Sequence record: LR756508.1
Length of the DNA: 64,000 bases
Direction: 5' to 3' (one strand)
A program made the translations under genes and the position numbers. Below are positions 3,952-57,738 of the stretch, piece by piece (the stretch's first letter is position 1; the number at the start of each line of letters is the position of its first letter). A model generated the notes under the pieces. That model worked only from the letters and a program-made list of their open reading frames with translations, did no database searches and was not told the DNA's origin.

Positions 3952-3968
3952 ATTAAAGAGACTATAGT

Positions 3969-4265: not shown

Positions 4266-4290
4266 TAATTAAAAAGGTGTATGACATCGA

Positions 4291-8742: not shown

Positions 8743-8806
8743 AACACTTAAAAAAAAAAAAAAGACGAAAAACTAAATAAACTTTAAGATAAAAAAATGA
8801 AACACC

Positions 8807-22537: not shown

Positions 22538-24307
22538 GTGGATTCAAATCTTTCAGACGACCAGATAAAAGAAATAGCAGAAGAGCACCCTTCGCACATC
22601 ACAATAAAGCTTAAAGCAGAAGACAGCGAGTTTTATAATCACATCGACCAAAAGTATGAGGCAGATAGATTCACAGAAAAACTCTATCAATATTTGTATG
22701 GAGAAGATGAAAAAACTTGTGACTTAGACGAATGTTCTAATACCTGTAACTTCCAAAGTTTTGGACTTGGATTTCAAAAGTATTGTTCATATGACTGTAG
22801 TGGAGCCGCTAAGAAAAACCGCGTAAAAAATGAGTGTGAGATATGCGAGAAAAACTTTGAAACTGTAGAATCAAGATCCCGCAGGTTTTGTAGTGAAGAG
22901 TGTAGAAGAAAATATAATAAGACTGAAGAGTGTAATAGAAAAAGAGTTGAGTCACATAAAAAAACAACACAAGAGAAGTATGGAGAAGATTTTTACTTCC
23001 AAACCGATGAGTTCAAAGAGAAAGCCAAAGAAACAAAGATAGAGAGATACGGTAAGAAGAATTATAAAAATGTTAAAAAGGCCAAAAAAACAAAAAAAGA
23101 AAGATATGGGGATCCAAACTACAACAATAAAGAAAAAATGCTTGAAACATTAAATCAGAGGTATGAGTCGAGAAACGGGCAGTTTATAGAAAACATTTCT
23201 CAAACACGTGAGTATAGAGAAACTCAGCGTCAAAATCAGATTGATGTTATTGACAAGAAACTTCCAAGTCATATTAGCAGGGGTTTTGGGGTTGAAGATT
23301 ATAATGGAGTCCGAAATTCCGAAGGAATGTTTTACTATAAATTTTTCTGCTCCAAGTGTGAGGAGACATTTATGGATAAATTTGATTATGGAAACTTCCC
23401 TTCCTGCCCGTCCTGCGATAGACCTTCGCAGGGAGTTTCTAAAATTGAAAATGAAGTTTGTGAATACGTAAAATCAATCTTACCAGACCAAACGGAAGTC
23501 TTTGAAAACGACAATGAACTTCTTGGCAGAAAAGAGATAGATATTTATGTTCCTGAAAAAAATGTCGCTATTGAATTCAATGGGATATACTGGCATAGCG
23601 AGAACGGCGGTGGAAAAGATAAAGATTATCACTTGAAAAAGACTGAAGCCTGCGAAGAAGCAGGCATTCAACTTATTCATATTTTCGAAAACGAGTGGAT
23701 TTTAAACAGAGATGTTGTCGAGAGAAAACTGGCCCATATTCTTAAAAGCTCTAGTGATGACGCAGTTCATGAAAGGAATTGCAGAGTTGAGACAATTACG
23801 AATGAAGAAGCCCAGGTATTTTTGGAAGAACATCACCTCCAAGGATCTTTTGAATGTACCTTTAACCTGGGACTATTTTTAGAGAATGAACTGGTCGGGG
23901 TTATGACATTTGAAAGATTTTTAACAGACAACTCCAACTCCTGGACGATAAAAAGATTTGCACTTTCAAAACGTGTTGAAGGTGCAGCAAAAAAACTGTT
24001 TACTGAATTCCGAAGAAGAAAAGGTCCTGATAAAGTTGTAATCCATCTAGATCGACGTCGGAGTTCAAAACTGGATAACGTTTATGATAATATTGGATTC
24101 GAACTAGAAATAACAGACCCAAACTATTATTATTTTAAGGAAAGCTCAGTTCAGCTTTACGATCAAAACAGTTTCAGAAAAGAAGTGCTAAACGAAAAAC
24201 TTGAAAACTTTGATTCTGACTTGACGGAATGGGAAAACATGCAGAGGCACGGTTATGACAGAATTTGGGACTGTGGACATTTGAAATACACTTGGACAAA
24301 AAATTAG
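22538..24307 (+). CDS. Zn-rich PD-(D/E)XK homing-endonuclease-like protein with C-terminal GNAT-like domain (paralog 1)
   Basis: CxxC/CSxxC clusters, KKTxxERYG repeats, EIDIYVPEKNVAIEFNGIYWHS, C-terminus LTEWENM..RIWDCG. Confidence 0.75.
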   Translation: MDSNLSDDQIKEIAEEHPSHITIKLKAEDSEFYNHIDQKYEADRFTEKLYQYLYGEDEKTCDLDECSNTCNFQSFGLGFQKYCSYDCSGAAKKNRVKNECEICEKNFETVESRSRRFCSEECRRKYNKTEECNRKRVESHKKTTQEKYGEDFYFQTDEFKEKAKETKIERYGKKNYKNVKKAKKTKKERYGDPNYNNKEKMLETLNQRYESRNGQFIENISQTREYRETQRQNQIDVIDKKLPSHISRGFGVEDYNGVRNSEGMFYYKFFCSKCEETFMDKFDYGNFPSCPSCDRPSQGVSKIENEVCEYVKSILPDQTEVFENDNELLGRKEIDIYVPEKNVAIEFNGIYWHSENGGGKDKDYHLKKTEACEEAGIQLIHIFENEWILNRDVVERKLAHILKSSSDDAVHERNCRVETITNEEAQVFLEEHHLQGSFECTFNLGLFLENELVGVMTFERFLTDNSNSWTIKRFALSKRVEGAAKKLFTEFRRRKGPDKVVIHLDRRRSSKLDNVYDNIGFELEITDPNYYYFKESSVQLYDQNSFRKEVLNEKLENFDSDLTEWENMQRHGYDRIWDCGHLKYTWTKN

Positions 24308-24312
24308 GTTTT

Positions 24313-26652
24313 ATGGATTTTAACTATTCAAAAGAAGACATAGAGAGAATAGCAGAAGAGTGTCCTTCACTCGTGACGAGAAAAATAAAAGCACATGATA
24401 AGAAACTATATGAGCATGTGAGCAAAAACTTTAAAGGAGAGAAATTCACAGAGAAGCTTTTCCGATTTATGTATGGCAATGAAGCTTCTGTGTGTGATAT
24501 GAGGGATTGCGAAAATACTGTAAGTTTTTTAAGTTTCACTAGAGGATTCAAAGAGTTTTGTTCACGATCATGTGGAGCCAGAAAAAAAGGTTCAAAAGAA
24601 AACATTAAATGTTCCTACTGCGAAAAAGAGATAGATGTGTATAAGTCTGAAGACAAAAAATACTGTTCTCATGAATGCTACATAAAACACAGAAATCAAA
24701 AAGATGATTTTGATGAGCAGTTGAGAAAAGCTAATAGGTTATTTTGGGATGATGATATTGATGGAGATGTTGATAAAAAAGACATTATGCCTAAAGAAGA
24801 TATTAAAAAAATTGCAGAAAAACATGAAACTCATTTGCTACGGAGAATTAAATCTGCCTCTCTTGAAACGAAAGCTTTTATCGATAACAATATTAGTGGA
24901 GAAACGTTTGTAGAGAAAGTATATCGATTTGTTTATAATGATATTACCGATGAGTGTGATATAGATGGCTGCGATAACACTTGCTCTTTTAAATCTTTTT
25001 CTGAAGGATATAAAGACTTCTGCTCAATAGATTGCGTCATTAAATCAAATGATTACTCGGCTATAAGAGATAAAGCTAAGTCTACGCTTCAAAAACGGTA
25101 TGGAGTCGACCATCCGGCTAAAATGGAAGATTATGAGGAAAAGGTAAAAAAGACGAAAGAAGAGCGATATGGTGATCCAAATTATAACAATATCGAGCAG
25201 ATGAAGAAGACTTGCCAAAACAAATATGGTGGCGTTGGTTTTGCCTCCGATAGACTAAAAGAAAAAGTGAGAGAGACATGTAGAGATGTATATGGTGATC
25301 CTGATTATAAAAACAGGAATAAAGCCATGAAGACTATTAGAGAAAGGTATGGTCAAAAAATTCCCCCTAAGGCTTTAGAAAAATTAAAAGAGAGGTTGGA
25401 AAAGGGTGAAGTTGGTTTTGGTTCAGATAATTATCTGAATTCAATACGCGAAAAATATGGGAGAGAAGATATTGAAAACATTTCGCAGGTTGAAGAGATT
25501 AAAAATAAAAAAAGGAGAAATCGTTTGAAGAAAAAATACAAAAAACTTTTCGAGAGCCCCAAATTTTCTGATAAGATAAAACCATTATTCTCCTTTGAAG
25601 ATTACGAAGGCGTTTACTTGGAAGATAATGAACAAACAACACCGAGATACCCATTCAAATGTAAAAAATGTGATACAGAGTTCGAGGACTATTTGAATTC
25701 TGGTCATGTTCCAAGATGTCCTGAGTGTGATCCGAAAATGTGTAAACGATCAAATGCAGAAGAAGAAATAACTGCTTTTATAGAGAAGATCTTACCAGAA
25801 GATCAAGAAGTAGTTAAAAACGATAAGTCGGTTCTAGACGGAAAAGAACTCGACATCTACACCCCTGGCAAAAATATAGCAATCGAGTATAACGGTTTAT
25901 ACTGGCACAGCGAGACCCAGGGAGGAAAAGACAGGTATTACCATTTAAACAAGACGGAAGAATGCGAAGACCAGGGAATCCAGCTTATTCACATTTTTGG
26001 AAACGAGTGGAGAGACAAACCTGATGTAATTAAAAGAAGGCTCCGTCACATTCTTGGATGCTCTAACCAAGATTCTATTTATGCCAGGAACTGCACAGTA
26101 AAAGAAATAGACAGGAAAGCGAAGTCCCGTTTCCTAAAAAAATATCACCTGCAGGGAGCAGGTGCTTCTCGCATAAAACTTGGGCTTTTTCACGGCGAGT
26201 TTTTTAACAGCGATTTGGTAGGTGTGATGACTTTTGGAACCCCAAGCGTTGCGCAGGGTCACAAGGAAAATAAAAGAAAACAGTGGGAAATGAAGCGTTT
26301 TGCCTTATCGAAACCTGTTGTGGGAGGAACGGGAAAGCTTTTTAAGCACTTTGTACGAAGCTACGATGCGCCGAGAGTGAAAACGTATGCCGATAGGCGT
26401 TGGAGCACGAAAATCGATAACGTGTATGAAAAGATTGGATTTGAGTATATTGGATCAAGCAATCCAAACTATTATTATTTTCACAAAGAAAATCCAATTT
26501 TGAAACACAGATTTAATTTTCGAAAAGACCAGTTGGACGACAAACTTAAAAACTTCGATCCAAACTTAACTGAATGGGAGAATATGCAGAGGCACGATTA
26601 CGACAGGATTTGGGACTGCGGCCACCTAAAATACATCTGGGAAGCTGACTAA
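24313..26652 (+). CDS. Same endonuclease family (paralog 2) with duplicated N-terminal Zn module
   Basis: ATG at 24313. Two copies of KEDI..IAE..GE.F.EK..RF.Y..C..C..F.SF..G.K.FCS..C; ELDIYTPGKNIAIEYNGLYWHS; YADRRWS. Confidence 0.75.
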   Translation: MDFNYSKEDIERIAEECPSLVTRKIKAHDKKLYEHVSKNFKGEKFTEKLFRFMYGNEASVCDMRDCENTVSFLSFTRGFKEFCSRSCGARKKGSKENIKCSYCEKEIDVYKSEDKKYCSHECYIKHRNQKDDFDEQLRKANRLFWDDDIDGDVDKKDIMPKEDIKKIAEKHETHLLRRIKSASLETKAFIDNNISGETFVEKVYRFVYNDITDECDIDGCDNTCSFKSFSEGYKDFCSIDCVIKSNDYSAIRDKAKSTLQKRYGVDHPAKMEDYEEKVKKTKEERYGDPNYNNIEQMKKTCQNKYGGVGFASDRLKEKVRETCRDVYGDPDYKNRNKAMKTIRERYGQKIPPKALEKLKERLEKGEVGFGSDNYLNSIREKYGREDIENISQVEEIKNKKRRNRLKKKYKKLFESPKFSDKIKPLFSFEDYEGVYLEDNEQTTPRYPFKCKKCDTEFEDYLNSGHVPRCPECDPKMCKRSNAEEEITAFIEKILPEDQEVVKNDKSVLDGKELDIYTPGKNIAIEYNGLYWHSETQGGKDRYYHLNKTEECEDQGIQLIHIFGNEWRDKPDVIKRRLRHILGCSNQDSIYARNCTVKEIDRKAKSRFLKKYHLQGAGASRIKLGLFHGEFFNSDLVGVMTFGTPSVAQGHKENKRKQWEMKRFALSKPVVGGTGKLFKHFVRSYDAPRVKTYADRRWSTKIDNVYEKIGFEYIGSSNPNYYYFHKENPILKHRFNFRKDQLDDKLKNFDPNLTEWENMQRHDYDRIWDCGHLKYIWEAD

Positions 26653-30514: not shown

Positions 30515-32035
30515 ATGGACTTGGAGTTACAAGAAGAAATCGAGAGTTTGGTCGAAGAGAACCCGAAGCACTTCTATTGGAAGATAAAGAGTAAACATAA
30601 CGAACTTTTTGAAGAAATCGAAAATCAGTATGAAGATAAAGACTCTTTTTCCGAGGGTCTTTATCTTTTTCTGTATGGGGACGAAAAAGAGAAGTGCAAT
30701 TTGAAGGGCTGCTCCAACCCCTGCGTTTTCAGATCGTTTACCGATGGATATCGGAGCTATTGCTCAAAAAAGTGTGGGTATAAAAGCCAGAAAAACAAAG
30801 AGACAAGGAAGTGTGAAGTCTGTGAGTCTGAATTTGAAGTGAGAGAGAGTAGATCTAAAAAACTTTGTTCCCGAGAGTGCTGGCGCGAATGGAACCGCAG
30901 GGAAGATGTTCAGAAAAAACGTGAGAGAGCCAGAAAAAACACACTTCAACAGAAGTATGGTAACGATACATACCGAAATGTCAAAAAAGCGAAGAACACA
31001 AAAGAAAAGCGGTATGGAAATCCAAATTACAACAACTTAGAGAAGATAAAGTCTACAATGGAAGAAAAGTATGGTGGGATGGGTTTTCAATCTGATCATA
31101 TTCTTCAAAAGGTAGGCTCAAGTCGTTTCCCTCCCAACCAGTCGAAGTTAGAAAAAGAGCTGCAGGAGTTCATTTCCTCAATCACAGACTTCGAAGTCAA
31201 AACAAACCATCGTGGGTTTTTAAAAGGAAACAGGGAGCTGGATGTTTTTATCCCAGAGAAAAATGTAGCTATCGAATTCAATGGAATCTACTGGCATAGC
31301 GAAAATGGAGGCGGGGAATGTGGCCGAAATTATCATTTAAAAAAAACCGAGGAGTGCGAAGACAAAAATATCCAACTTATTCACGTTTTCGAAAACGAGT
31401 GGGAGGAAAAGAAAGAGATAGTCAAAGAAAGGTTAAAATATATCCTTGGAGAGTACGACGGGAAAAGAGTTTATGGTAGAGACACCGAGGTAAAAGAAAT
31501 TGAAGCTAAGCGGAAGAACGAGTTTTTAAGCGAGCACCACCTTCAGGGAGAAGATCGGAGTAACGTGAAGCTCGGATTGTTTTATAAAGGCAGCCTCGTA
31601 TCAGTTATGACGTTTTCAGAAAGAAGAGTTTCTTTAGGCGGAAACCCTGAAGACAATAGCTGGGAGCTTTCTCGGTTTTGTATGTCTTGCTCTGTTGTGG
31701 GCGGCGCTTCAAAACTTTTTTCTCATTTCGTTGAAAACCAGAATCCAGAAAAGGTCGTAACCTATGCAGATCGTAGGTGGAGTTCTTTAGCGAGAGGCAC
31801 GTTTTACGAAAAAACTGGGTTCGACTTCGATGGATTTGTTCGGCCTTCGTATTTTTATTTTGAAGAAAACGACAAAACAAATCTAAAACACAGGTTCAGT
31901 TTTCGCAAAAACGTATTAGGCGAGAAGCTTAAGGACTTCGATCCAGACCTTACGGAGTGGGAGAACATGAAAATGAATGGTTTTGATAGGATTTGGGACT
32001 GCGGAAAACTGCGGTATGTTTGGAGCGAAAAGTAG
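30515..32035 (+). CDS. Endonuclease family paralog 3
   Basis: ELDVFIPEKNVAIEFNGIYWHS; WELSRFC; GGASKLF; YADRRWS; RIWDCG. Confidence 0.75.
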   Translation: MDLELQEEIESLVEENPKHFYWKIKSKHNELFEEIENQYEDKDSFSEGLYLFLYGDEKEKCNLKGCSNPCVFRSFTDGYRSYCSKKCGYKSQKNKETRKCEVCESEFEVRESRSKKLCSRECWREWNRREDVQKKRERARKNTLQQKYGNDTYRNVKKAKNTKEKRYGNPNYNNLEKIKSTMEEKYGGMGFQSDHILQKVGSSRFPPNQSKLEKELQEFISSITDFEVKTNHRGFLKGNRELDVFIPEKNVAIEFNGIYWHSENGGGECGRNYHLKKTEECEDKNIQLIHVFENEWEEKKEIVKERLKYILGEYDGKRVYGRDTEVKEIEAKRKNEFLSEHHLQGEDRSNVKLGLFYKGSLVSVMTFSERRVSLGGNPEDNSWELSRFCMSCSVVGGASKLFSHFVENQNPEKVVTYADRRWSSLARGTFYEKTGFDFDGFVRPSYFYFEENDKTNLKHRFSFRKNVLGEKLKDFDPDLTEWENMKMNGFDRIWDCGKLRYVWSEK

Positions 32036-32097
32036 TGAACCAAGGCCAGTTATACTATATTTAATATAGAGTTGAAGGGCTTAATTAATTTTATAGA

Positions 32098-32817
32098 ATG
32101 CCAATGCAAGAAAAACTTCGGTCTATTGTTAAAGAAGAACTCCAAAAACTTGCTGAGAGAGCTGGAGTTCACCCACACAGATTTCGTAAGATCCGAAAGC
32201 GGTTAGAGATGAAGCACGGCTTCGAAATCACCGACTGGGGCACAGCCGATAGAGGTCAGTATGTGGAGCTCGATGGAAGCCATCGGATTGAATTCTTTCT
32301 CCGTGGAAGCAACGCTGCGGAAATTATCGTTGATGGAGAGTCAATTGGAAGAACTCGCCTCAGTAGAATTACAGACGCTATTGAAAACGCCGTCGAATCA
32401 GGAACGGTATTGGACCCAGAATACCGCTCCGAGGAAAGTAAAATTAGAGAGATTATTCGTAGGGAGCTAAAAGAGTTTGACGTAGCTCAACTTCCTTCAG
32501 CGAACTCAGTAAGAGGTGGGTACAATAAAAAAGTAGAGAATAAAAAAGACTTGGACGAAGATCACCTTTCTGACGGAGACAAGAGAAGGCTCAACAGAAA
32601 ACTCCGAGAATTACTTCGAAGAGCAGAAGCCGTTGATGAATTTGTAGAGAAGTCTATGAATCTCTATGGCAGAAATGGAAAACATAGCCCAATGGTTCTT
32701 ACTACGTTGGATGACATGAAGTGCTTTAGCGACGTCCGTTCCCGACTTGACCGACTCGCAAATTACTTAAAGGACGAATATCCGAACTTCGAATGGACTT
32801 TTAAGGAATCAATTTAA
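32098..32817 (+). CDS. Protein with two leader copies (N-terminal and internal)
   Basis: QEKLRSIVKEELQKLAE at the start and EESKIREIIRRELKE at nt 32431-32475. Confidence 0.75.
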   Translation: MPMQEKLRSIVKEELQKLAERAGVHPHRFRKIRKRLEMKHGFEITDWGTADRGQYVELDGSHRIEFFLRGSNAAEIIVDGESIGRTRLSRITDAIENAVESGTVLDPEYRSEESKIREIIRRELKEFDVAQLPSANSVRGGYNKKVENKKDLDEDHLSDGDKRRLNRKLRELLRRAEAVDEFVEKSMNLYGRNGKHSPMVLTTLDDMKCFSDVRSRLDRLANYLKDEYPNFEWTFKESI

Positions 32818-32832
32818 ACTTGAGAAAATGAT

Positions 32833-33294
32833 ATGGAAAAAAGAATAGAAAAGTTTGTAGACTATATTCGAGATTATCTTCGAAGACAAGACGCTAACAG
32901 CACAAATAAAGGTAAAATTAATCGTTTGCTTAAAAATGAGTTTGGAAGTCAAGCTGTTCGCTCCCGAGATCCACAAAAAGTTGTTAACGTGCTAAAGAAG
33001 GATGGAATTTTAACTCACGACTCGGACTCCTTTGGAAGCTACGATTACTACGTTCATCTGAGCGAGCAGAACGGCCTCCGACAAATTGTTCGAGAGGAGC
33101 TAAAAAACATTCTATCCGAGCAGGGCCGAGGACATCTTCCTAGCCAAGCCCAGCAACACATTAAAGACGCTCAGTATAATCTCGATCAAGCGAAAGGGGA
33201 GCTTCTCGGAACCGATTTCGAAGACTCTCAAATCTACGACGACCTCGCAAAAGCAGACCGAATTCTCAAATCCTACATTGACCAAATGAGATAA
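32833..33294 (+). CDS. Protein with an internal leader copy
   Basis: GLRQIVREELKNILSE at nt 33073-33120. Confidence 0.72.
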   Translation: MEKRIEKFVDYIRDYLRRQDANSTNKGKINRLLKNEFGSQAVRSRDPQKVVNVLKKDGILTHDSDSFGSYDYYVHLSEQNGLRQIVREELKNILSEQGRGHLPSQAQQHIKDAQYNLDQAKGELLGTDFEDSQIYDDLAKADRILKSYIDQMR

Positions 33295-33297
33295 ATT

Positions 33298-33555
33298 ATG
33301 AGACTAAAAGAAAGCCAACTAAGAAACGTTATACGTCAGGAGATTCAAAACGCTTTGACCGAAGATGATGATGGAGCGCTAAACCCCTGCATGTACTGCG
33401 GCTCTTCTGCCGAAAGGGCCAGAGATTATGCGCGGTCGGGCAAAACCACGATGATGGTAAGGTGCTCGAACGTGAACGACTGTCCAAATTGGACGGCAGT
33501 TGGCGCAAAAACACGGAGCGAAGCAGGTCAAGCCTGGAATGAGCTTCACTCTTAA
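33298..33555 (+). CDS. Leader fused to a Lar/Ral-like restriction-alleviation Zn domain
   Basis: MRLKESQLRNVIRQEIQNALTE, then LNPCMYCG..VRC..C..EA..AWN, the Lar-family signature. Confidence 0.7.
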   Translation: MRLKESQLRNVIRQEIQNALTEDDDGALNPCMYCGSSAERARDYARSGKTTMMVRCSNVNDCPNWTAVGAKTRSEAGQAWNELHS

Positions 33556-33569
33556 TTTGAGATTTGAGC

Positions 33570-33812
33570 ATGAAAGTTTCTGCAGACACACTAAGAAAAA
33601 TAATTAAGGAGGAAACAAGAGACCTGCTTAACGAAAAAGACAAATTCGATGGGCAGTCTGGAAACACTCTTCGCGTAAAAAAGAGAGCTTATCGCCAGGG
33701 AAGTGGCGTTGGGGGGATAATGATAAGCATAGAAGATGGTGGCAGGCCAGTGTTTCTAACAACGGATCAAGCTGGGAAGCTGAAGAATGCTATTGAGATG
33801 AAAACAAATTAG
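33570..33812 (+). CDS. Leader-bearing small protein (MKVSADTLRKIIKEETRDLLNE)
   Basis: ATG at 33570 begins the shared motif. Confidence 0.75.
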   Translation: MKVSADTLRKIIKEETRDLLNEKDKFDGQSGNTLRVKKRAYRQGSGVGGIMISIEDGGRPVFLTTDQAGKLKNAIEMKTN

Positions 33813-33851
33813 ACTAACAAAGTTTTGAATTAATCAAAAAATTGATGTATT

Positions 33852-34025
33852 ATGAGGCTTACAGAAAACAGACTTAAAAAAATTGTGCAAGAGGAGCTTG
33901 CAGAGGTTCTTTTCGAAGATGATCCCTGCTGGGAGAATTATACTATGGTGGGAATGAAACAAAAAAATGGGAAACTGGTTCCTAACTGCGTTCCCGACGA
34001 TGACGTTGAAAATTATGAAGGCTAA
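33852..34025 (+). CDS. 57-aa leader-bearing miniprotein with CW..Y...G.K.K.G..VPNCVP module (not in the ORF track)
   Basis: Translated by hand: MRLTENRLKKIVQEELAEVLFEDDPCWENYTMVGMKQKNGKLVPNCVPDDDVENYEG*. Confidence 0.8.
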   Translation: MRLTENRLKKIVQEELAEVLFEDDPCWENYTMVGMKQKNGKLVPNCVPDDDVENYEG

Positions 34026-34077
34026 TCTAATAGTTAGCAGTTTGAAAAGACTGTTTTAATATAATAGGGAATCTCAT

Positions 34078-34647
34078 ATGAAGCTACAAAATATCTTATA
34101 TGAGTCTGAGATCGTAAAAGAAAAACACGATCTTTCTGGCGCACCAGAAGAATTTGAAGTTCCAGATGTTAGCTCTAGCGCTAACAAGTTTAAAAATCCA
34201 AACGAAGTTGATCTCGGAGCCGTGAACTTTCTGGATACTGGTCCAGAGGGATGGGAAGCAGATGCCAACTCAAAAACGGCGAGTGCAGTAACGCTCGTTG
34301 ACGTCAAGGACGCAAAAAAACTGGAGGGAAAAATGAGGGAAAACAGAAAGTGGCACAAAAGAGAAGGCGAATGGTGGTTTGGCAATTTTCCACTCAAGAG
34401 CGAGGATGAAAATGTAACAACCTGGCAAAAATTTGTGAATGACATAGCCGAAAATGGCCTGGACTGGCCTATTACTGTATCGGTAACAAAATGGGGTGAA
34501 GCATTTCTGAGAGAAGGAAACCATCGCCTGGCAGTTTATGATCTTCTCGATATTCAACAAATACCCACTCATATCTGGTGGTGGGGAAACGTCCAAGGAA
34601 CGAAGCGTGATCCAATGAAAGAATACTTCGAAAAGGCATTTGAGTAA
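34078..34647 (+). CDS. ParB/Sulfiredoxin-like N-terminal domain protein with short leader MKLQNILYE
   Basis: DIAENGLDWPITV..FLREGNHRLAVY..IP, the ParB/Srx GxxR motif. Confidence 0.7.
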   Translation: MKLQNILYESEIVKEKHDLSGAPEEFEVPDVSSSANKFKNPNEVDLGAVNFLDTGPEGWEADANSKTASAVTLVDVKDAKKLEGKMRENRKWHKREGEWWFGNFPLKSEDENVTTWQKFVNDIAENGLDWPITVSVTKWGEAFLREGNHRLAVYDLLDIQQIPTHIWWWGNVQGTKRDPMKEYFEKAFE

Positions 34648-34726
34648 GTTTTCTGTTCAAACTCGCCTCAAGGGCTTGATTCTATAGTCTAATTTGAAAA
34701 GTTCTCGGTCTCAAAAAACGTAGTGG

Positions 34727-35584
34727 ATGATGAAAAAAAATTCTTCAAAAAAGCTCCAAAGAATTATTCTGGAGGAGTTAAGAAAATATAATCGAGATCG
34801 AGAGCTACTAAGCGAGTCTGGATTTCAACCAAGAAGTTCCCTCAAAAACTTTCAAAGGCAACGCAAAGGGATGATGTCAAACCTCATGGGAGGCGGCCCG
34901 AGCAGACCATCTACTCCCATGGAACAAGACTTTGGATGGAACCCACCTGAAGTCGATGAGTTTGATGGAAAATACCAGCTTGCAGAGAGTAGCAGTTTCA
35001 CAAATGGAAAAAGTGTTATAACTGAAAACGAGTCTGGCGTCGAGTCGACCTCTGAAGCTCAAATTGTAATCAGCACAAGCGATGCGAAAAGCTGCAGGCG
35101 AGCAGAAAATCATAAAAATTTGTGGAGAATAGTTCAAGGAAAAGGCTGGTACTTCGGGAAATATCCGTTAAATGAACGCGAAGACGAAGAAGTTTACTCG
35201 TGGAGAAAAATAATAAATGAGTTGGCGGAAAATGGTCCAAAAAAGCCAATCGAAATCCACGTCTGGTATAACGGTGAAGCAAAACTTTATGAAAGTAAAT
35301 ACGGAGCTGCGGCCTACGACATGCTTGGAATTCCACAGGTTCCCGCTCACATCAAATGGTTTGGGGGATCAGGTGGAACCGAAAGAGACGAGTTAAAAGA
35401 ATATTACCAAAGAGCTTTCCTCCCTAAAAATGCCAATAGTTTAGATCAATATTTTGATGGCGTAGACGGAGTGAACTTCGTAAGTGATAAGAAAAGAGTG
35501 AACTGGGTTGATGGAGACTCCGAGGTTCCTACCAGCCCTGCCGAAGCTTTGAAGACAGGAAACTACAAGGAGGGAAATATCTAA
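34727..35584 (+). CDS. Tandem paralog of the previous gene with the catalytic motif lost; long leader
   Basis: Aligns over W[WY]FG.[FY]PL..W....[DE][IL]AENG...PI...GEA, but EGNHR is replaced by ESKYG; starts KKLQRIILEELRKY..LLSE. Confidence 0.65.
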   Translation: MMKKNSSKKLQRIILEELRKYNRDRELLSESGFQPRSSLKNFQRQRKGMMSNLMGGGPSRPSTPMEQDFGWNPPEVDEFDGKYQLAESSSFTNGKSVITENESGVESTSEAQIVISTSDAKSCRRAENHKNLWRIVQGKGWYFGKYPLNEREDEEVYSWRKIINELAENGPKKPIEIHVWYNGEAKLYESKYGAAAYDMLGIPQVPAHIKWFGGSGGTERDELKEYYQRAFLPKNANSLDQYFDGVDGVNFVSDKKRVNWVDGDSEVPTSPAEALKTGNYKEGNI

Positions 35585-36438
35585 TGGTAAAATTCAAGTC
35601 ACTTCTTTTTGAGTCAGATCGTTTTGATGACCTATCAAAACCTGAAAAAGATGAAAAAGTTGAAGACTTAAAAAACCAGTTGAATACTGGCAACTGGATT
35701 GTAAAGGAGCCACTTCTTTATCGGGGAAGAGAGTGGGATGGTTTAATGAAAGTAAAAGACTCCGAGCGCTACGAAAAAAGAGAGCCCAGAGACACCAAAC
35801 TGCACTACGATTATCTAATTCATCACTTCACAGTTAACTGTTATCCAAACCTTCCTGACAGAAGAAAAAGTCGCTTCGCTTTGACTCATTTCGGAGATAC
35901 AAACATTTTCGGCGATGAGACCTATGTAATTTTCCCTCATAAGGATGCTAAAATTGCTTACTCTTACATGGATCCTTATGATTTTATAGTTGACATGCCG
36001 AAAAGAAAACAGGGTTTCATAAAAGGGTTAAAACCTTTTTTTAAAGATGGCAAGGAAAAAACATCACTTTATAAGAAATACGAAGATCAGATTTCAAAAG
36101 AGGTTAAAAACCTTATGTCTGACCTTTATGACGTTTATAATGGCAGTGAAATGCCTCTTTCACGTTACGGATGTCCCGAAGAAATCCTTGAAATGCTGAA
36201 CAATGAGTTGGATAAATTCAACGGAGACGAGCCTGGAGAGATTCGAAAAGTTATTTCGGGACTTAGCAATCTGATATGGATTTTTGAATCTGTTGTTTTA
36301 GAATATTTCGAAATTTTTAATACTGGGTATCCAGAGAATAAAGATATGGGAGCGGGAGAGGTTCTATATCAAGGAAAGTACCTGCAGGTTCATCGAGACC
36401 TGTTTGTGTTCGCTAAAGAAGAAAACGAGATAACATAA
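35584..36438 (+). CDS. Short-leader protein (MVKFKSLLFE), LYRG..REPRDT family, possible ART fold
   Basis: Paralog of 27179-27964. Confidence 0.5.
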   Translation: MVKFKSLLFESDRFDDLSKPEKDEKVEDLKNQLNTGNWIVKEPLLYRGREWDGLMKVKDSERYEKREPRDTKLHYDYLIHHFTVNCYPNLPDRRKSRFALTHFGDTNIFGDETYVIFPHKDAKIAYSYMDPYDFIVDMPKRKQGFIKGLKPFFKDGKEKTSLYKKYEDQISKEVKNLMSDLYDVYNGSEMPLSRYGCPEEILEMLNNELDKFNGDEPGEIRKVISGLSNLIWIFESVVLEYFEIFNTGYPENKDMGAGEVLYQGKYLQVHRDLFVFAKEENEIT

Positions 36439-36469
36439 TTCAAAATTTTAACCAAGAAAGAGAAAATGA

Positions 36470-37075
36470 ATGGATTTTAATGTTTTAGCCAAAAATTTAT
36501 TCGTAGAGGTTCGGAAGCCAGACGTAGATTATAACGAGGAGTTTGTAGAAGATCAGCTTGATAAAGTTGTTGCAGTCCTGGAAGGAAAACAAGGGTCTTA
36601 TACAACTGCCCTGGCAAGAGAATACGATCAAGTAAACAATGAATATAAGGAACTAAAAGAAGAAAGAAAAGAACTACGTGGCGACTTGTTGGAGCACGCA
36701 GAGAGCCTTTTTGACGCGGAAGACGAGGTAGCTACAAGGATTATCGAAACTGTCGGTCTTACCCTACAGCTTGATAAGCCTGTTTCTTACGAGCGTGAAG
36801 ACTTCGATAAAGAGGGGTTTTTAAAGGAGCTAATGGATCTTGTGCCCGAGCTTGAGGAACAGATCGAGGAGCTAATCGAGAAGTATACAGAAGTCAAGCA
36901 GATTGAGCGGTCTTCGAGGGTAAGAGTAAAAGAGGAAGGAATGAAAGACAAAGTTCAGAAAGCCTGGAATAAAGTTTCCGATGTCCTTTACGGATTCTGG
37001 CAAAAAATTCGGCGCTGGGGTCAAAGCTATGATCGTCGACTGGAGAAAATTCGAGCCAAGTACCTTTCTTCCTAA
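36470..37075 (+). CDS. Coiled-coil hypothetical protein with short-leader variant (LAKNLFVE)
   Basis: 201 aa helical ORF. Confidence 0.65.
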   Translation: MDFNVLAKNLFVEVRKPDVDYNEEFVEDQLDKVVAVLEGKQGSYTTALAREYDQVNNEYKELKEERKELRGDLLEHAESLFDAEDEVATRIIETVGLTLQLDKPVSYEREDFDKEGFLKELMDLVPELEEQIEELIEKYTEVKQIERSSRVRVKEEGMKDKVQKAWNKVSDVLYGFWQKIRRWGQSYDRRLEKIRAKYLSS

Positions 37076-38464: not shown

Positions 38465-40198
38465 ATGGTCCCAAACCGAAAGCAGATCAAATTAATCATT
38501 GATCAAAACCCCTCGACTTTCTACTGGAAAATTAAGTCTAAATACCCTGATTTCTTTGAGAGTGTTAAAAATAGATCAACTGGCGAGAGTTTTTCCGAAA
38601 AACTTTACCTCGAATTAAACGAAAAAGGTCAAAGATTTTGTAACATTAAAGGCTGCTCTGGTATATGCGAATTTCAAACTATAAACCACGGGTATGATAA
38701 TTTTTGCTCTAAAAACTGTAGTAGTGAACACTGGTCAAATTCTCGTAGTAGGACTCAAAAATCTTTAGTCTGCGAAAAAGAGTTTGAGCTTCGAGAGTGT
38801 GAAAATCAAAAATTATGTTCCATTGAGTGCAGAAATGAGTGGCTTTCGAAAGAAGAAGTGGTTAAAAAAAGAGTTGAAAAGGCAGAAGAAACATTAAATG
38901 AAAAATATGGAGACTCAACTTTTAGAAATGTGGAAAAAATCAAAAAGACAAAAAAAGATCGTTATGGCGATTCTAACTATAACAACTTAGAAAAAATGAA
39001 AGCCACGAAAGAAAAGCGTCACGGCGATCCTTTTTATGCGAACCTTAAAGAAATGAGGAGAAAAAACAAAGAAAAGTACGGAAATAGACAGATATCAAAG
39101 ACAGAATATTATAGCAGTAAGAGAGAAAAAACAGACTTTAAAAAGTTTTTCAACAAACTGGTAAATTTAGACAGGTTATCAGATAAAGTTGAGCCTTTGT
39201 TTTCTCTCGATGAATATGAGGGAGTGCGTTACTACAAAGAATACGAATTTAAGTGTCTTGAATGTAATGCTAAATTCGAGGATCATTTAATGAGTGGCCA
39301 TGTTCCTCGATGTCCGAGCTGTTATCCAATCAAAGATTACTCCTCTAAAGCCGAAAAAGAGATATTTGAATATGTATCCAAGTTGTTAGACGTGGAGGTT
39401 CAGCGAAATGTAGAGAACGTTCTTGAACAAAAAGAACTGGATATATTTGTTCTTGAGAAAAATTTAGCTATTGAATTTAACGGTCTATACTGGCATTCGG
39501 AAAATGCTGGAGATAAAAGTAAAGAGTACCATCTACAAAAAACTAATCAGTGTGAAGAGAAAGAAATTCATTTAGTTCATATTTTTGAGGACGAATGGAT
39601 TGATAAACAGAATATTGTCAAGAACAGGTTGAAGCACCTCCTTGATAAAAATCATCAGAGGCTTTGTGGAAGAGACTGCAGTTTAAAAGAAGTAACTACC
39701 AAAAAGAAAAATGAATTTTTAAATCAGCATCATCTTCAAGGTCCAGTTAGCGACAAAGTTTGTTATGGACTCTATTATCAGAATGATCTCGTTTCTTTAA
39801 TGTCTTTTGGAAAGACGAGATATGACAACGGATGGGAAATTTATCGGTTTTGTAACTCAAACGTTTCGGTTGTAGGTGGAGCAAGTAAACTGCTTCATAA
39901 ATTTACTGAAGACTATAATCCTGATAGAATTGTAAGTTATGCTGATAGGCGGTGGTCTATGAAAGGAAATACATTTTATAACAAAATTGGATTCGAGTTT
40001 GAAAATGCTACTGATCCGAACTATTGGTATATGAAAGATTATCGCGAAAGAGAATATCGATTCAAGTATAGAAAAAGTCAGTTAGAGAATATATTAGAAG
40101 AGTTTGATTCAAGTTTGACCGAGTGGGAAAACATGCAGATGAATGGTTACGACCGAATTTGGGATTGTGGAAACTTGAAATTTGTGTGGAGGAAATGA
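38465..40198 (+). CDS. Endonuclease family paralog 4
   Basis: YEFKCLEC..GHVPRCPSC, ELDIFVLEKNLAIEFNGLYWHS, VSYADRRWS, RIWDCG. Confidence 0.75.
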   Translation: MVPNRKQIKLIIDQNPSTFYWKIKSKYPDFFESVKNRSTGESFSEKLYLELNEKGQRFCNIKGCSGICEFQTINHGYDNFCSKNCSSEHWSNSRSRTQKSLVCEKEFELRECENQKLCSIECRNEWLSKEEVVKKRVEKAEETLNEKYGDSTFRNVEKIKKTKKDRYGDSNYNNLEKMKATKEKRHGDPFYANLKEMRRKNKEKYGNRQISKTEYYSSKREKTDFKKFFNKLVNLDRLSDKVEPLFSLDEYEGVRYYKEYEFKCLECNAKFEDHLMSGHVPRCPSCYPIKDYSSKAEKEIFEYVSKLLDVEVQRNVENVLEQKELDIFVLEKNLAIEFNGLYWHSENAGDKSKEYHLQKTNQCEEKEIHLVHIFEDEWIDKQNIVKNRLKHLLDKNHQRLCGRDCSLKEVTTKKKNEFLNQHHLQGPVSDKVCYGLYYQNDLVSLMSFGKTRYDNGWEIYRFCNSNVSVVGGASKLLHKFTEDYNPDRIVSYADRRWSMKGNTFYNKIGFEFENATDPNYWYMKDYREREYRFKYRKSQLENILEEFDSSLTEWENMQMNGYDRIWDCGNLKFVWRK

Positions 40199-41949: not shown

Positions 41950-44900
41950 ATGGCAAATGGGGAAGAAGAAAATCAAGATCCATTTGGCGAAGATCCCTTT
42001 GGGGATCTTGAAGCCTCAATAACCGATTCTTTTAGTCGCCTCCAGCAGTCCATCGATGCGCACACAGATCAAATGAACGAAATGCAGGGAGGTGCTGCCG
42101 ATACTCTATTCTCTTCTGACTTTCTCAATTCTCTCAACGAAAACCTTTCAAGGGTAGCAGATAATCAAGAGCAGATTCTTCAGCAGCAGGAAGACTTAAA
42201 AACTGAGTATGAACAGCTAAATTCAAATCTTACTACAGTTAATACTTCTCTATCTGACCTGCAGGATAATATAAATAGCTTTTCCCTGCCGGGAACAAGT
42301 TTTGACTTCTCTCCAGTCCGTTCTTCAATTCAACGTCTGCAGTCTGTCTTTCAAGAAAGACTTCAAGTTCTGTCTCAAAAAATTGACGGCATATCAATGC
42401 CTAATGAAGTTGAGGCAGACTTTGATATAAACTTAGAATCCTTGCGTTCTCCTATACGAAGCCTGCAGTCTGTTTTTCAAGGTGGGTTTCAGGTTTTATC
42501 CCAAAAAATTGAGGACATCTCTATTCCAGAAGACTTGGAGGCCAATGTCGAATTTGACGAGAGTTCTGTAGTTTTAGCTATTGAAAACCTTAGAACATCT
42601 CTTAACAGAAAAACACAAGAATTCATAAATCGATTTGGAGACTTTGCAGAACTCGAAAACACTCTTGAGTTTTCTAATAATAATTTTGAACCTGTCATAT
42701 CCTCGATCAGAAGTCTCCAATCTGTAGTTCAAGGAGGATTTCAAAGTTTTTCTGAAAAACTTTCCGAGATTTCTTTTCCAACTGAAACTGAGACAAATAT
42801 ACACTTTAACGAAGACCGTCTCATTTCTGCTATTGAGAGCGTAAGAGCTACGTTTCGAAATGAGATTCAAAGACTTTCTGCAGACTTGAGTGGAGTATCC
42901 AACATTGAAAATGTTGAATCGGAAACTGACGTTGATTCAATCAGGTCCGCAGTCTCGGAAGGCGTAACTGAAGCCATGGTCAGAATCGAGCAGCAGAGGT
43001 TAATGCAGAGAGGGAGGAGTGAAAATCAGGCTAATGAGACTCAACGAACAACAACTCCCACTCCAGTCCAAACGAGCGTTTCTATTGGAGATATTTCAGT
43101 TCCAAACATAGGAACGGGAGGAATTCCACGAATTTCGAACCTTCTTTCTGGAAATGTAACCTTAAATCAAGAATTCCCCGAATTTCTTTCTGAACTTGAG
43201 GCCAGAAATAAAACGTTGTCCGAAGCTATAAGCGTTACTAACCGGGAGTTAACTGGCTTCCAGGGAAGCTTGTCTGATCTCATTGAGACTGGTGAAGACG
43301 TTGAAGAAATTGATCTTGGAGATGCTCTCGGAGGAAATCTTAAAAAGAACGTGGAAGGATATCAACAAGCTATTGATGGGTTGTTTGATAAATTTACGAA
43401 TGTGATCGGGGATCAAGGCGAAAAGCTAGTTTCAACTACAAGAAATATAATTAAAGAAACTGGCGAACAGCTTAGATTTGAGCAGATCCAACCCGATAAT
43501 CTTGTAGGGCTCGTTTCAAGAGACCTTGGTTATGAAGAGGTTTACGAGCAGCTTGAAACGATGGCTCAAAATATCGAAAACGAGTTTATTTCATCTGCCG
43601 CAAATATAGCTGCTGGAGTTGAAGATCAAGAAATGCTTCAAAAAATGAACCAGCAGATAGCTGGCTCGATGAACCAGATATTTGAGGTTTATCAGCAGCT
43701 TGAGCAGCAGGATCTGAACCGGATGGAAATTAAGCAAGGTCTTGTAACCGCTACTGAGCAGATTAAGGAGGAATCTCAAGAACTACGAGAAACAAACGAA
43801 CAGTTTGCCGATCAACAAGACGCAGTTCTCTCCCAGCTTGTAGAAAGCGTTGATCAAGTTGAAAAAATAAAACAAAAAAGAGAGGCTCAAAACGAGGTTT
43901 ATTCGCGTTACTTTGGAATGCTAGAGAGCGTCCAGGACAGATATGAGGATATGCAGACTCTGCTTTCTGGCATTGGAGAAATGATGAGTAGCCCAAAAAT
44001 GTGGGGACTTGCTGCTTTGAACGGGGCTCTGGCCCTTGGATATCAAATCTACGACCAGATATTGGATATTGATGAGAGCCTTCTTGGAGTCGCCGATAGC
44101 ACTGGATTAGTGCAGGAAAACTTATCGGAGGTAAGGAATGTTGTAATGGACATTCAAGGTCCTCTTATGGCAAGAGGTGCTACTCTAGAGCAGATTGCCC
44201 AGTCGGTGGGAATGATTAGATCTCAAATGCAGGGGGCAAACGTTACGACCGAGCGGCTAGGCATGAACACCGAAGAGCTTTCAAGTGCAATTGTCGACGT
44301 GGCAACTGGATTTAATGTTTCTAACGAGGCGGCAGCAGAAGTTCTCTCTACAATGCAGGTGATCACTGACGCTACGGGCTCTGCACTTGAGGATACATTG
44401 ATTATGACTCAGCAGCTTGCGACCCAGCGCGAAGTAGCTCCACAAGCTGTGTTTAGTGATATTCGAAATGCGTCCGAAGAAATAGCAGAATACGGAGAAA
44501 TAAATGCAAGAAATATAGCGAATGCCGCTGTTAGCGCAAGAGAACTTGGGACGAACTTAAACGAAGTTCTTGGTATAGCGAAAAACTTTAGAAATGATAT
44601 TGTGGGTTCTGTTCAGTCTCTCCAGCAGGCAGAGCTTATGCTCGGGCAGCGCATTCCCGCAGAAGAGCTTGTTAGTGCATCCTTTGAGTCTCCCGAGGCA
44701 TTTACACGGGAGCTACGAAATACGATAGAAAATCTTAACTTAGATCTGGATGGACCTCTTGCCACGTATAGACTACAATCTCTTTCCGATGCGTTTGGAG
44801 TTTCCGTGCAGAGACTGCGTGAGATGGCCGAATCCGCCGAGGCAGCGGAAAAAGCTCTTGAGTCGGTTCCTGCCGGAGAACGCTTCGGAGTTTTGAACGA

Positions 44901-57423: not shown

Positions 57424-57738
57424 ATGAGACTGACAGAGTCTAAATTGAAAAAACTGGTTTTAAATGAACTTCAGCGATACCTGACCGAAGACGAAGCCAT
57501 TGATTCAAAATATCTGCGTGACCACCTCGATTATTTTATCGAAGGTGATTTTACCAATGAAGACGAGAAAAAATACTTGAAGTGGTTGAAAAGTTTAATT
57601 CAACAGTTGCATCCCGACGACGACCTAACAAAAGAAGATGTTTTTGAACTAACTCGCACCGACTTTCGTTTTCCGAACGAAGTTGTAGAAAAGGTCGACT
57701 ACTATACACTGATTAATCAGATCTGGAAACAAATTTAG
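57424..57738 (+). CDS. Leader-bearing small protein (MRLTESKLKKLVLNELQRYLTE)
   Basis: Isolated leader gene inside the replication block. Confidence 0.78.
   Translation: MRLTESKLKKLVLNELQRYLTEDEAIDSKYLRDHLDYFIEGDFTNEDEKKYLKWLKSLIQQLHPDDDLTKEDVFELTRTDFRFPNEVVEKVDYYTLINQIWKQI

What the first reader, a model, noticed from the sequence alone, without database searches (positions are those of the whole stretch)
33298..33555. Lar-like anti-restriction domain fused to the leader
Seen: the leader is followed by PCMYCG..C..C..EA..AWN. Known: the Lar/Ral family alleviates type I restriction, and T4 IPI* is a packaged inhibitor of GmrSD. This is the clearest functional hint that leader cargos protect incoming DNA at the moment of entry (inference).
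Basis: partly seen in the sequence, partly recalled or inferred. Interest (0 to 1): 0.65.

Follow-up and report, generated by a model that had tools for sequence, protein, structure and literature searches.

The report
Lar-like zinc ribbon with head-targeting leader
A small, well-conserved gene of a 484-kb uncultured T4-like phage joins a 22-residue leader, shared by about 30 of the phage's genes and looking like a capsid-targeting propeptide, to a distant relative of the Lar "restriction alleviation" zinc-ribbon domain. It may therefore be a protein carried in the phage head and injected with the DNA, but neither packaging nor anti-restriction activity has been shown.

Summary
Window 33298-33555 (+) is an 85-codon ORF: a 22-residue leader, then a four-Cys domain ending in E-A-x2-A-W-N.

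The ORF is a real gene. Two syntenic orthologues give dN/dS of 0.09-0.16.

Lar is the best or only family hit in Pfam, NCBIfam and PHROGs (E 7e-3 to 3e-4), and the hits span the whole domain. All scores fall below the curated cut-offs. Language-model neighbours, an AlphaFold/BFVD fold search (23 of 25 functionally named top hits are Lar) and hhalign against E. coli Lar (P 0.009) agree. I read it as a divergent Lar-fold domain, not a certified family member.

The leader occurs on about 30 ORFs of this genome. It usually ends in [LIVM]-x-E, the T4 gp21 cleavage motif. The genome has T4-type portal, S77 prohead protease and gp23 capsid genes. The same leader occurs in 67 IMG/VR stretches, and all five multi-leader contigs tested carry S77.

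The likeliest reading is a T4-IP-like packaged, processed and injected protein.

Anti-restriction activity is inference only. The one characterised family member, Rac Lar (RalR), is also reported to be a DNase toxin. Packaging, cleavage and activity are all untested.

The parts
33298..33555 (+). Whole ORF: 85 codons plus a TAA stop. It encodes the leader followed by the Lar-like domain.
   Evidence: ORF listed. Two orthologues at 85% and 78% identity. dN/dS 0.09-0.16.
33298..33363 (+). N-terminal leader, residues 1-22: a predicted amphipathic helix shared by about 30 ORFs of the genome. Proposed to be a capsid-targeting propeptide.
   Evidence: The leader HMM scores this ORF at i-E 1.9e-8. AF2 predicts a helix at residues 3-21. 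dS for the leader is 1.4-1.7 against dN 0.06-0.17, so conservation is at the protein level, not the DNA level.
33355..33363 (+). L20-T21-E22, the putative cleavage site for the prohead protease. Cleavage after E22 would leave a 63-residue mature protein of 6.9 kDa and pI 5.6.
   Evidence: A [LIVM]-x-E ending at leader positions 19-26 is present in 16 of 22 leaders from this genome and 78 of 92 from IMG/VR. T4-type proteases cut after Glu (PMC5694885). Cleavage itself is inferred.
33364..33552 (+). Cargo, residues 23-85: a Lar-like zinc ribbon of three strands followed by a C-terminal helix.
   Evidence: TIGR03655 E 5.6e-4 on these residues alone. PF14354 matches residues 28-81 to profile positions 3-55 of 58. 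PHROG 599 hit. BFVD fold hits. hhalign against E. coli Lar. AF2 places strands at 38-43, 51-56 and 68-70 and a helix at 73-84.
33388..33402 (+). First zinc knuckle, C31-x2-C34-G35.
   Evidence: Read directly from the sequence. It aligns with C9-x2-C12-G13 of E. coli Lar. C34 and G35 are invariant in all four relatives; C31 is Arg in P0003.
33463..33483 (+). Second Cys pair, C56-x5-C62. Typical Lar proteins have C-x2-C here.
   Evidence: Read directly from the sequence. Both Cys are invariant in the four relatives; P0004 has C-x4-C.
33520..33540 (+). C-terminal helix motif E75-A76-x2-A79-W80-N81.
   Evidence: Read directly from the sequence. It aligns with E-A-L-E-R-W-N of E. coli Lar. A76, W80 and N81 are invariant.
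32098..32817 (+). Neighbouring leader-bearing ORF (239 aa) with two leader copies, at residues 4-24 and 112-134.
   Evidence: Leader HMM hits.
32833..33294 (+). Upstream ORF (153 aa) with an internal leader copy at residues 80-101. It lies in the same frame as the target ORF, separated by one stop and one codon.
   Evidence: The stop is kept in all three orthologous loci (TAA, TAA, TAG).
33570..33812 (+). Downstream leader-bearing ORF (80 aa).
   Evidence: The ORF is also present in L105 and L106.
33852..34025 (+). Downstream leader-bearing ORF (57 aa).
   Evidence: Its start is also seen at the ends of L105 and L106.

Best explanation
**Shown.**
- The gene is a real, selected 85-aa ORF in the structural (tail and head) half of a 484-kb T4-like phage.
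- Its first 22 residues are a helical leader shared by about 30 otherwise unrelated small ORFs. The leader ends in L-T-E.
- The rest is a four-Cys zinc ribbon plus a C-terminal helix. Its best, and essentially only, relatives are Lar-family proteins.

**Inferred mechanism.**
- As with the T4 internal proteins, the leader binds the assembling prohead core.
- The phage's gp21-type S77 protease then cuts after E22.
- The 63-residue mature zinc ribbon stays in the head with the DNA and enters the cell with it.
- There it acts before any phage gene is expressed. The likeliest action is interference with a host DNA-targeting defence. Restriction alleviation, as named for Lar, is the leading guess.

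**My estimate for each step.**
- Real gene: about 0.97.
- Lar-fold homologue: about 0.8.
- Leader is a cleaved capsid-targeting propeptide: about 0.65.
- Activity is anti-restriction: about 0.3.
For: **Gene.** ORF. Orthologues with conserved synteny. dN/dS 0.09-0.16.

**Lar-like domain.**
- PF14354: E 7e-3, residues 28-81 matched to profile positions 3-55 of 58.
- TIGR03655: the only hit, E 1.3e-3, and E 5.6e-4 on residues 23-85 alone.
- PHROG 599 'Lar-like': E 2.7e-4.
- Six-frame search of the record: E 0.0047.
- ESM Atlas: 22 of 30 nearest clusters belong to the PF14354 set, with score 0.91 and 177-185 shared features.
- AF2 model against BFVD: the top hit is 'Restriction alleviation protein Lar' at E 5e-4, and 23 of the 25 functionally named hits in the top 50 are Lar.
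- hhalign against E. coli Lar: P 0.0094, with all motifs in register.

**Leader as a capsid-targeting sequence.**
- About 30 leader ORFs, all on the + strand.
- They cluster around the S77 protease (record 156480-158204), with other clusters at 186-195 kb and 218-220 kb.
- T4-type portal, protease and gp23 capsid genes are present.
- The capsid protein's N-terminal region has several L-x-E sites.
- [LIVM]-x-E ends the leader in 16 of 22 leaders from this genome and 78 of 92 from IMG/VR.
- The same leader occurs in 67 IMG/VR stretches.
- All five multi-leader contigs tested carry Peptidase_S77.

**T4 precedent.** T4 packages diverse internal proteins that share only a capsid-targeting sequence, and one of them, IPI*, is an injected restriction inhibitor (PMC3012670; PMC9026906).
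Against: - All Lar HMM scores are below the curated cut-offs: 17 against 28.6 bits, and 19-20 against 39.6.
- P0003 has no Lar hit. P0004 reaches only E 1.3.
- TnpB-type zinc ribbons in the same genome reach 15.5 bits on PF14354.
- The AF2 model is only moderately confident: pLDDT 71.5, and the other four models score 44-49.
- One orthologue lacks the first Cys.
- The mature domain is mildly acidic (pI 5.6), whereas T4 internal proteins are basic.
- The gene sits in the tail module, not next to the protease.
- The leader has no sequence similarity to the T4 capsid-targeting sequence. It was not found in T4, P-SSM2, Syn9, S-PM2 or HTVC008M.
- There are no proteomic or RNA data; the only sequencing run that holds the locus is halite-metagenome DNA.
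- Rac Lar (RalR) is also described as a DNase toxin (PMC4041452), so the fold does not by itself predict anti-restriction.
- The relative P0004 has no leader.
Confidence: 0.45

Rival explanations
1. The protein is packaged but is not an anti-defence factor. The zinc ribbon would be an internal head or core protein that binds the packaged DNA or the scaffold, helping condensation, assembly or ejection.
For: - The leader family and T4-type head module are present.
- Many T4 core proteins, such as gp67, gp68 and IPIII, have assembly roles (PMC9026906).
- Zinc ribbons are generic nucleic-acid binders. The weak PDB neighbours are dsRNA-binding domains and the TFIIS zinc ribbon.
Against: - The domain is small, acidic (pI 5.6) and rare. 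Only one relative turned up outside the lineage among 1.84 billion representative proteins. That is unlike a core structural component.
- Its best family link is to Lar, not to any head protein.
Confidence: 0.2
2. The leader is not a capsid-targeting signal. It would be a shared N-terminal helix with another role, such as oligomerisation, localisation or binding a common partner. The Lar-like protein would then act in the cytoplasm after it is made, as Rac Lar does.
For: - There is no sequence similarity to the T4 capsid-targeting sequence.
- Some ORFs carry the motif internally or near the C-terminus.
- The gene lies in the tail module.
- There are no proteomic data.
Against: - The [LIVM]-x-E protease motif is conserved at the end of the leader.
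- Leader genes cluster around the S77 protease.
- All five tested IMG/VR leader contigs encode S77, including 19-kb and 69-kb fragments.
- A shared leader joined to unrelated cargos is the T4 internal-protein design.
Confidence: 0.17
3. The cargo is a RalR-like nuclease or toxin. It would be delivered or expressed to damage host DNA and take over the host, rather than to block restriction.
For: The founding family member, RalR, is reported to be a non-specific DNase and is annotated as such (PMC4041452; NF007260 hit for P0005).
Against: - The ORF does not hit the RalR equivalog model. Identity to RalR is only about 27% over 48 columns.
- A non-specific DNase stored next to the phage's own DNA would need an inhibition mechanism, and none is evident.
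Confidence: 0.08
4. The Lar resemblance is generic. The domain would be an unrelated four-Cys zinc ribbon whose C-x2-C-G and A-W-N motifs converge on the Lar profile.
For: - All scores are below threshold.
- TnpB zinc ribbons with the same motif string score 15.5 bits.
- PF14354 gives weak hits (E up to 10) in all 14 control genomes.
- The second Cys pair has an atypical C-x5-C spacing.
Against: - Three HMM libraries, the language-model neighbours, the fold search and hhalign all point to the same family and cover the whole domain.
- No hit to OrfB_Zn_ribbon or any other zinc-ribbon family appeared in Pfam at E up to 1.
Confidence: 0.15

Closest known systems
Rac prophage Lar (RalR) of E. coli K-12, and the Lar family (Pfam PF14354, NCBIfam TIGR03655, PHROG 599)
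   Same: Both are domains of about 55 residues. The order of elements is the same: C-x2-C-G knuckle, strands, second Cys pair, then a helix with E-A-x3-W-N. Lar is the best family hit in three libraries, and the predicted fold is the same.
   Different: - Scores fall below all curated cut-offs.
- The second Cys pair is spaced C-x5-C rather than C-x2-C.
- The Arg or Lys after W-N is replaced.
- The ORF carries a 22-residue leader that Lar proteins lack.
- The activity is unknown, and RalR itself is described both as a restriction alleviator and as a DNase toxin (PMC4041452).
T4 internal proteins (IPI, IPII, IPIII) with their capsid-targeting sequence; IPI* is an injected inhibitor of the GmrSD restriction enzyme
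   Same: - A short N-terminal propeptide is shared by otherwise unrelated small proteins.
- The leader ends in the gp21-type [LI]-x-E motif.
- The genome has gp20, gp21 and gp23 homologues.
- The mature size (63 aa) is close to that of IPI* (76 aa) (PMC3012670; PMC9026906).
   Different: - The leader is 22 residues, against 10-19 in T4, and is unrelated in sequence.
- There are about 30 cargo genes instead of about 3-5.
- The cargo fold is a zinc ribbon, not the IPI* fold.
- Packaging and cleavage have not been demonstrated here.
Phage P1 Dar proteins (DarA, DarB, Hdf)
   Same: They are a precedent for capsid-packaged, injected proteins that protect incoming DNA from type I restriction (PMC12810830, listed; otherwise established knowledge).
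   Different: There is no sequence or fold relationship. Dar proteins are large and are incorporated by a different route.
Processed ejection proteins of giant phages (phiKZ, SPN3US)
   Same: Many head proteins carry N-terminal propeptides that a gp21-related protease removes after Glu (PMC5694885).
   Different: Those proteases belong to family S80 and use an A/S/G-x-E motif. Their propeptides are not one shared leader. Here the protease is S77 and the motif is [LIVM]-x-E.

Membership tests
Lar family (Pfam PF14354 Lar_restr_allev; NCBIfam TIGR03655 anti_R_Lar) | HMM score at or above the curated cut-off | tested here: not met
   - PF14354: 17.0 bits against a cut-off of 28.6, E 7e-3.
- TIGR03655: 19.0 bits against 39.6 for the whole ORF, and 20.2 bits with E 5.6e-4 for residues 23-85.
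- Lar is nevertheless the top or only family in each library.
- The E. coli Lar control scores 55.3 bits.
Lar family | N-terminal C-x2-C-G zinc knuckle | tested here: met
   C31-x2-C34-G35 aligns with C9-x2-C12-G13 of E. coli Lar. Exception: orthologue P0003 has Arg31.
Lar family | Second Cys pair after a beta hairpin (typically C-x2-C) | tested here: inconclusive
   C56 and C62 are invariant in the four relatives, but the spacing is C-x5-C (C-x4-C in P0004). Zinc binding was not testable.
Lar family | C-terminal helix with the E-A-x3-W-N-x-R motif | tested here: met
   E75-A76-x2-A79-W80-N81 lies in register with E-A-L-E-R-W-N of Lar. The basic residue that follows is replaced (E-L-H-S).
Lar family | Fold: three-stranded zinc ribbon plus a C-terminal helix | tested here: met
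   The AF2 model has strands at 38-43, 51-56 and 68-70 and a helix at 73-84 (pLDDT 71.5). In BFVD the top hit is a Lar protein at E 5e-4, and 23 of 25 functionally named hits in the top 50 are Lar. No solved Lar structure exists for comparison.
Lar family | Alleviates type I restriction and enhances modification | not testable with these tools
   This needs a plating or methylation assay. Only Rac Lar has been tested, and it is also reported to be a DNase (PMC4041452).
T4-type capsid-targeted internal proteins | Short N-terminal propeptide shared by unrelated small proteins | tested here: met
   About 30 ORFs in the record carry the leader, 22 of them at i-E below 1e-3. None of the cargos scanned belongs to a known family.
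T4-type capsid-targeted internal proteins | Propeptide ends in the prohead-protease motif ([LI]-x-E, cut after Glu) | tested here: met
   The target has L20-T21-E22. The motif is present in 16 of 22 leaders from this genome and 78 of 92 from IMG/VR. The capsid protein's N-terminal region has several L-x-E sites.
T4-type capsid-targeted internal proteins | Genome encodes a gp21-type (S77) protease with a T4-type portal and capsid | tested here: met
   - PF03420: 91.7 bits, interrupted by an intein.
- Portal_T4: E 7.7e-52.
- Gp23: E 3.8e-82.
T4-type capsid-targeted internal proteins | Sequence similarity to the T4 capsid-targeting sequence | tested here: not met
   The leader HMM finds nothing convincing in T4 (one partial match at E 0.0023) and nothing in four cultured T4-like marine phages.
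T4-type capsid-targeted internal proteins | Processed protein present in the virion and ejected | not testable with these tools
   The phage is uncultured. The only run holding the locus is halite-metagenome DNA.
   No Ral family appears among the Pfam hits at E up to 1.
TnpB / OrfB zinc ribbon | Match to the OrfB zinc-ribbon model, or similarity to the genome's own TnpB-like ORFs | tested here: not met
   There is no such Pfam hit at E up to 1. The domain HMM does not hit the three TnpB-like ORFs at E up to 10.

The most novel reading that the evidence does not exclude
A lineage of environmental T4-like phages, huge ones included, would use one undescribed leader of about 22 residues as a universal address tag. 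The tag would load dozens of different small proteins into the head for co-injection with the DNA. The consensus is M-K-L-T-E-x-K-L-R-x-I-I-K-E-E-I-x-K-L-x-E, cut by the S77 protease.

This ORF would then be the first Lar-fold protein delivered ready-made with the DNA. That would remove the timing problem of Lar and Ral, which normally act only after they have been expressed. The leader would also let the injected proteome of uncultured phages be read straight from sequence.
Probability: 0.3. Interest if true: 0.75.

Novelty: new variant of a known kind. Interest (0 to 1): 0.5.

Why it matters
If the leader is a capsid-targeting propeptide, about 30 genes of this phage can be predicted from sequence alone to encode packaged, injected proteins. 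So can many genes in dozens of uncultured T4-like phages. This ORF is the only one of them with a family hint, which makes it the natural first test case.

A pre-loaded Lar-type factor would extend the T4 IPI* and P1 Dar principle of injected anti-restriction proteins to a widespread but barely characterised zinc-ribbon family. It would also give that family a second experimentally tractable member.

If the reading is wrong, this is simply one more small zinc-ribbon ORF of unknown function.

Tried and rejected
- **Word-index protein search and full HMMER search of 1.84 billion representatives.** These found only the gene's own cluster and one leaderless relative, P0004. No bridge to bona fide Lar proteins could be built.
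- **Attempts to collect diverse Lar sequences for a deep profile-profile test.**
  - E. coli Lar through the word search gave only relatives at 73% identity or more.
  - IMG/VR gave 80 near-identical Rac copies.
  - Genome contigs gave 9 close copies.
  - PF14354 was found in 2 of 201 Gammaproteobacteria.
  - tblastn against phages gave 7 records.
  - Only a shallow hhalign was therefore possible.
- **PDB searches.** Neither sequence nor fold gave a significant match.
- **tblastn of the ORF against 50,697 phage records.** Only the record itself matched.
- **Lar-like cargos behind the leader in the IMG/VR leader loci.** None were found.
- **Leader alignment as a related-loci query.** A degenerate DNA pattern was used instead.
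- **tblastn of an IMG/VR leader protein against cultured phages.** No match.
- **The peptide in the literature.** No match.
- **The leader as a DNA or RNA element.** Rejected, because its synonymous divergence is high.
- **Read-through fusion with the upstream in-frame ORF.** Rejected, because the stop is conserved as TAA, TAA and TAG.
- **Origin from the genome's TnpB zinc ribbons.** Rejected.
- **Promoter and terminator scan of 31900-36600.** Counts are close to those of shuffled sequence, so it gives no usable information on the operon.
- It was rerun by reference.
- **Complex prediction was not used.** I make no claim about a specific binding partner.

Full report
**1. What is there**

The window is bases 186001-250000 of LR756508.1, an unannotated 484,177-bp 'uncultured phage' record. 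The only public run that holds the locus is halite-metagenome DNA.

At 33298-33555 (+) there is an 85-codon ORF.
- Residues 1-22 form the leader, which ends L20-T21-E22.
- Residues 23-85 contain C31-x2-C34-G35, C56-x5-C62 and E75-A76-x2-A79-W80-N81.

**2. It is a real gene**

Two other metagenome contigs (L105 from JGI, L106 from ENA) carry orthologues at 78% and 85% identity. Both have the same neighbours on each side.

Pairwise dN/dS is 0.09-0.16 at dS 0.8-1.0. The leader is constrained as strongly as the domain, with dN 0.06-0.17 against dS 1.4-1.7. It is therefore conserved as protein, not as a DNA or RNA element.

The upstream ORF is in the same frame, one stop and one codon away. That stop is kept as TAA, TAA and TAG in the three loci, so the genes are separate.

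**3. Is the cargo Lar-like?**

HMM evidence:

| Library and model | Query | E-value | Bits | Curated cut-off |
|---|---|---|---|---|
| Pfam PF14354 | whole ORF; residues 28-81 match profile 3-55 of 58 | 7e-3 | 17.0 | 28.6 |
| NCBIfam TIGR03655 | whole ORF | 1.3e-3 | 19.0 | 39.6 |
| PHROG 599 'Lar-like' | whole ORF | 2.7e-4 | 22.1 | none |
| PF14354, six-frame over the 484-kb record | this ORF | 0.0047 | 16.6 | 28.6 |

TIGR03655 is the only NCBIfam hit.

Independent lines of evidence:
- 22 of the 30 nearest ESM Atlas clusters belong to the PF14354 set, with score 0.91 and 177-185 shared features.
- An AlphaFold2 model (pLDDT 71.5; helix 3-21, strands 38-43, 51-56 and 68-70, helix 73-84) was searched against BFVD. 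The top hit is 'Restriction alleviation protein Lar' at E 5e-4. Of the 25 functionally named hits in the top 50, 23 are Lar.
- hhalign of the four-member family against an E. coli Lar alignment gives P 0.0094 over 48 columns. Both Cys pairs and the E-A..W-N helix are in register.

Evidence against:
- Every HMM score is below its curated cut-off.
- P0003, which has Arg for Cys31 through a TGC-to-CGC change, has no Lar hit. P0004 reaches only E 1.3.
- Three TnpB-like ORFs in the same genome reach up to 15.5 bits on PF14354 through their own zinc ribbon.
- No solved structure is related.
- An exhaustive HMMER search of 1.84 billion representatives found only one outside relative. This is P0004, 109 aa, E 5e-15, with no leader. 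The family is tiny and isolated.

Verdict: a divergent Lar-fold homologue at about 0.8 probability, not a certified family member.

**4. What the Lar name is worth**

The family is named after Rac prophage Lar. RefSeq and NCBIfam now call that protein the endodeoxyribonuclease toxin RalR of a type I toxin-antitoxin pair (PMC4041452). Its original description was restriction alleviation and modification enhancement; the phage Rac-SA53 annotation still says so.

Other members are uncharacterised, and the literature search found only annotations. Lambda Ral is a different family and was not hit. The fold therefore suggests a DNA-related activity but does not establish anti-restriction.

**5. The leader**

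A regex and then an HMM find the leader about 30 times in the record. Twenty-two distinct copies score i-E below 1e-3. All are on the + strand, and most sit at ORF starts.

The copies fall in clusters:
- 151-162 kb
- 186-195 kb
- 218-220 kb, which contains this ORF
- single copies elsewhere

The first cluster surrounds a T4 gp21-type prohead protease (Peptidase_S77, 91.7 bits, interrupted by an intein with a LAGLIDADG endonuclease). That protease lies between a T4-type portal and a gp23-type major capsid protein (E 3.8e-82).

Prohead proteases of T4 and its giant-phage relatives cut after Glu (PMC5694885). Here a [LIVM]-x-E ends the leader in 16 of 22 copies from this genome. Further sites recur at leader positions 5 and 14. 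The capsid protein's N-terminal 62 residues also hold several L-x-E sites.

A degenerate DNA pattern for the leader found 67 stretches in IMG/VR, holding 131 leader domains, up to nine per locus. Of the distinct IMG/VR leaders, 78 of 92 end in [LIVM]-x-E. All five multi-leader contigs tested encode Peptidase_S77, including fragments of 19 kb and 69 kb.

The leader is absent from T4, P-SSM2, Syn9, S-PM2 and HTVC008M, from Pfam and PHROGs and from the searchable literature.

The design is that of the T4 internal proteins: one shared propeptide on many unrelated small cargos, removed by the prohead protease. T4's internal proteins share only a capsid-targeting sequence, and IPI* is an injected inhibitor of GmrSD (PMC3012670; PMC9026906).

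**6. Mechanism proposed**

Shown:
- the two-part architecture
- its conservation
- the T4-type head machinery
- the motif at the junction

Inferred:
- The pro-protein enters the prohead core through the leader.
- The S77 protease cuts after E22.
- The 63-residue mature zinc ribbon (6.9 kDa, pI 5.6) is retained and co-injected.
- It acts on a host DNA-directed defence.

I put the packaging step at about 0.65 and anti-restriction activity at about 0.3. The section Rival explanations sets out the rivals: a structural or DNA-binding internal protein, a non-targeting leader, a RalR-like nuclease, and a generic zinc ribbon.

**7. Novelty**

Both components are of known kinds. Their fusion, and this particular leader, appear to be undescribed. 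I rate the finding as a new variant of a known kind and of moderate interest. The leader system as a whole is the more interesting object. This ORF is its one cargo with a testable functional hint.

**8. Limits**

- There are no expression or proteomic data.
- The alignments are shallow (4 sequences).
- The model is only moderately confident.
- The Lar comparison profile is narrow.

Noticed in passing
window 32098-32817 and 32833-33294; also window 261-1139, and record 151090-151602 and 152341-152838: Some ORFs carry the leader internally or twice. Examples are residues 4-24 plus 112-134, residues 80-101, and residues 173-195. This suggests polyprotein-like products that the protease cuts into several cargos, or recent fusions of leader-cargo cassettes.
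   Followed up: partly
window 3254-5108, 8332-9316 and 57424-57738: There are further leader-bearing small ORFs in the window, at least eight. None of those scanned has a Pfam or PHROG family.
   Followed up: partly
window 22538-24307, 24265-26652, 30515-32035 and 38465-40198; record 158244-159944: Five large paralogues (506-795 aa) match PHROG 3339/559 ('homing endonuclease/HNH') at E down to 1e-134. The one checked in Pfam (window 30515-32035) has a weak Mom-like C-terminal hit. They are scattered through the tail and head modules.
   Followed up: no
window 16463-18937 and 19952-22426: Two tail-sheath paralogues of 824 aa each lie side by side.
   Followed up: no
window 34078-34647 and 34727-35584: Two adjacent ORFs share a conserved C-terminal domain, seen by eye in the translations. 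One copy contains a G-N-H-R motif reminiscent of ParB/Srx-type folds. Neither has a Pfam hit at E up to 0.01, and the 285-aa ORF has a weak leader-like stretch near its start.
   Followed up: no
record 156480-158204 (L004:6480-8201) and 145763-149923 (L003:45763-49920): The prohead protease gene is interrupted by an intein with a LAGLIDADG endonuclease. The T4-type portal gene (1386 aa) carries several Hint/intein segments and an HNH domain.
   Followed up: partly
record 118868-120097, 270126-271352 and 411322-412551 (outside the window): Three TnpB-like paralogues of about 408 aa. Their zinc ribbon has the same C-x2-C-G ... C-x2-C ... A-W-N string and scores up to 15.5 bits on the Lar Pfam model. 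This is a caution for any sub-threshold Lar call.
   Followed up: partly
record 42469-42642 (L001): A second Lar-like stretch below threshold (PF14354 E 0.0076, profile positions 6-54 of 58). It has no leader and no obvious ATG start, and may be a non-packaged Lar-like gene in the same phage.
   Followed up: partly
L101 (Logan SRR18572986 contig), 856-2153: The leaderless relative P0004 sits among other small Cys-rich ORFs. One is a 206-aa protein whose N-terminus has C-x2-C-G ... C-x-C ... V-W-N, so it is also Lar-like.
   Followed up: no
L120-L186 (IMG/VR): The leader occurs in 67 stretches from many samples, up to nine copies per locus. Its consensus there is tighter than in this genome.
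   Followed up: partly
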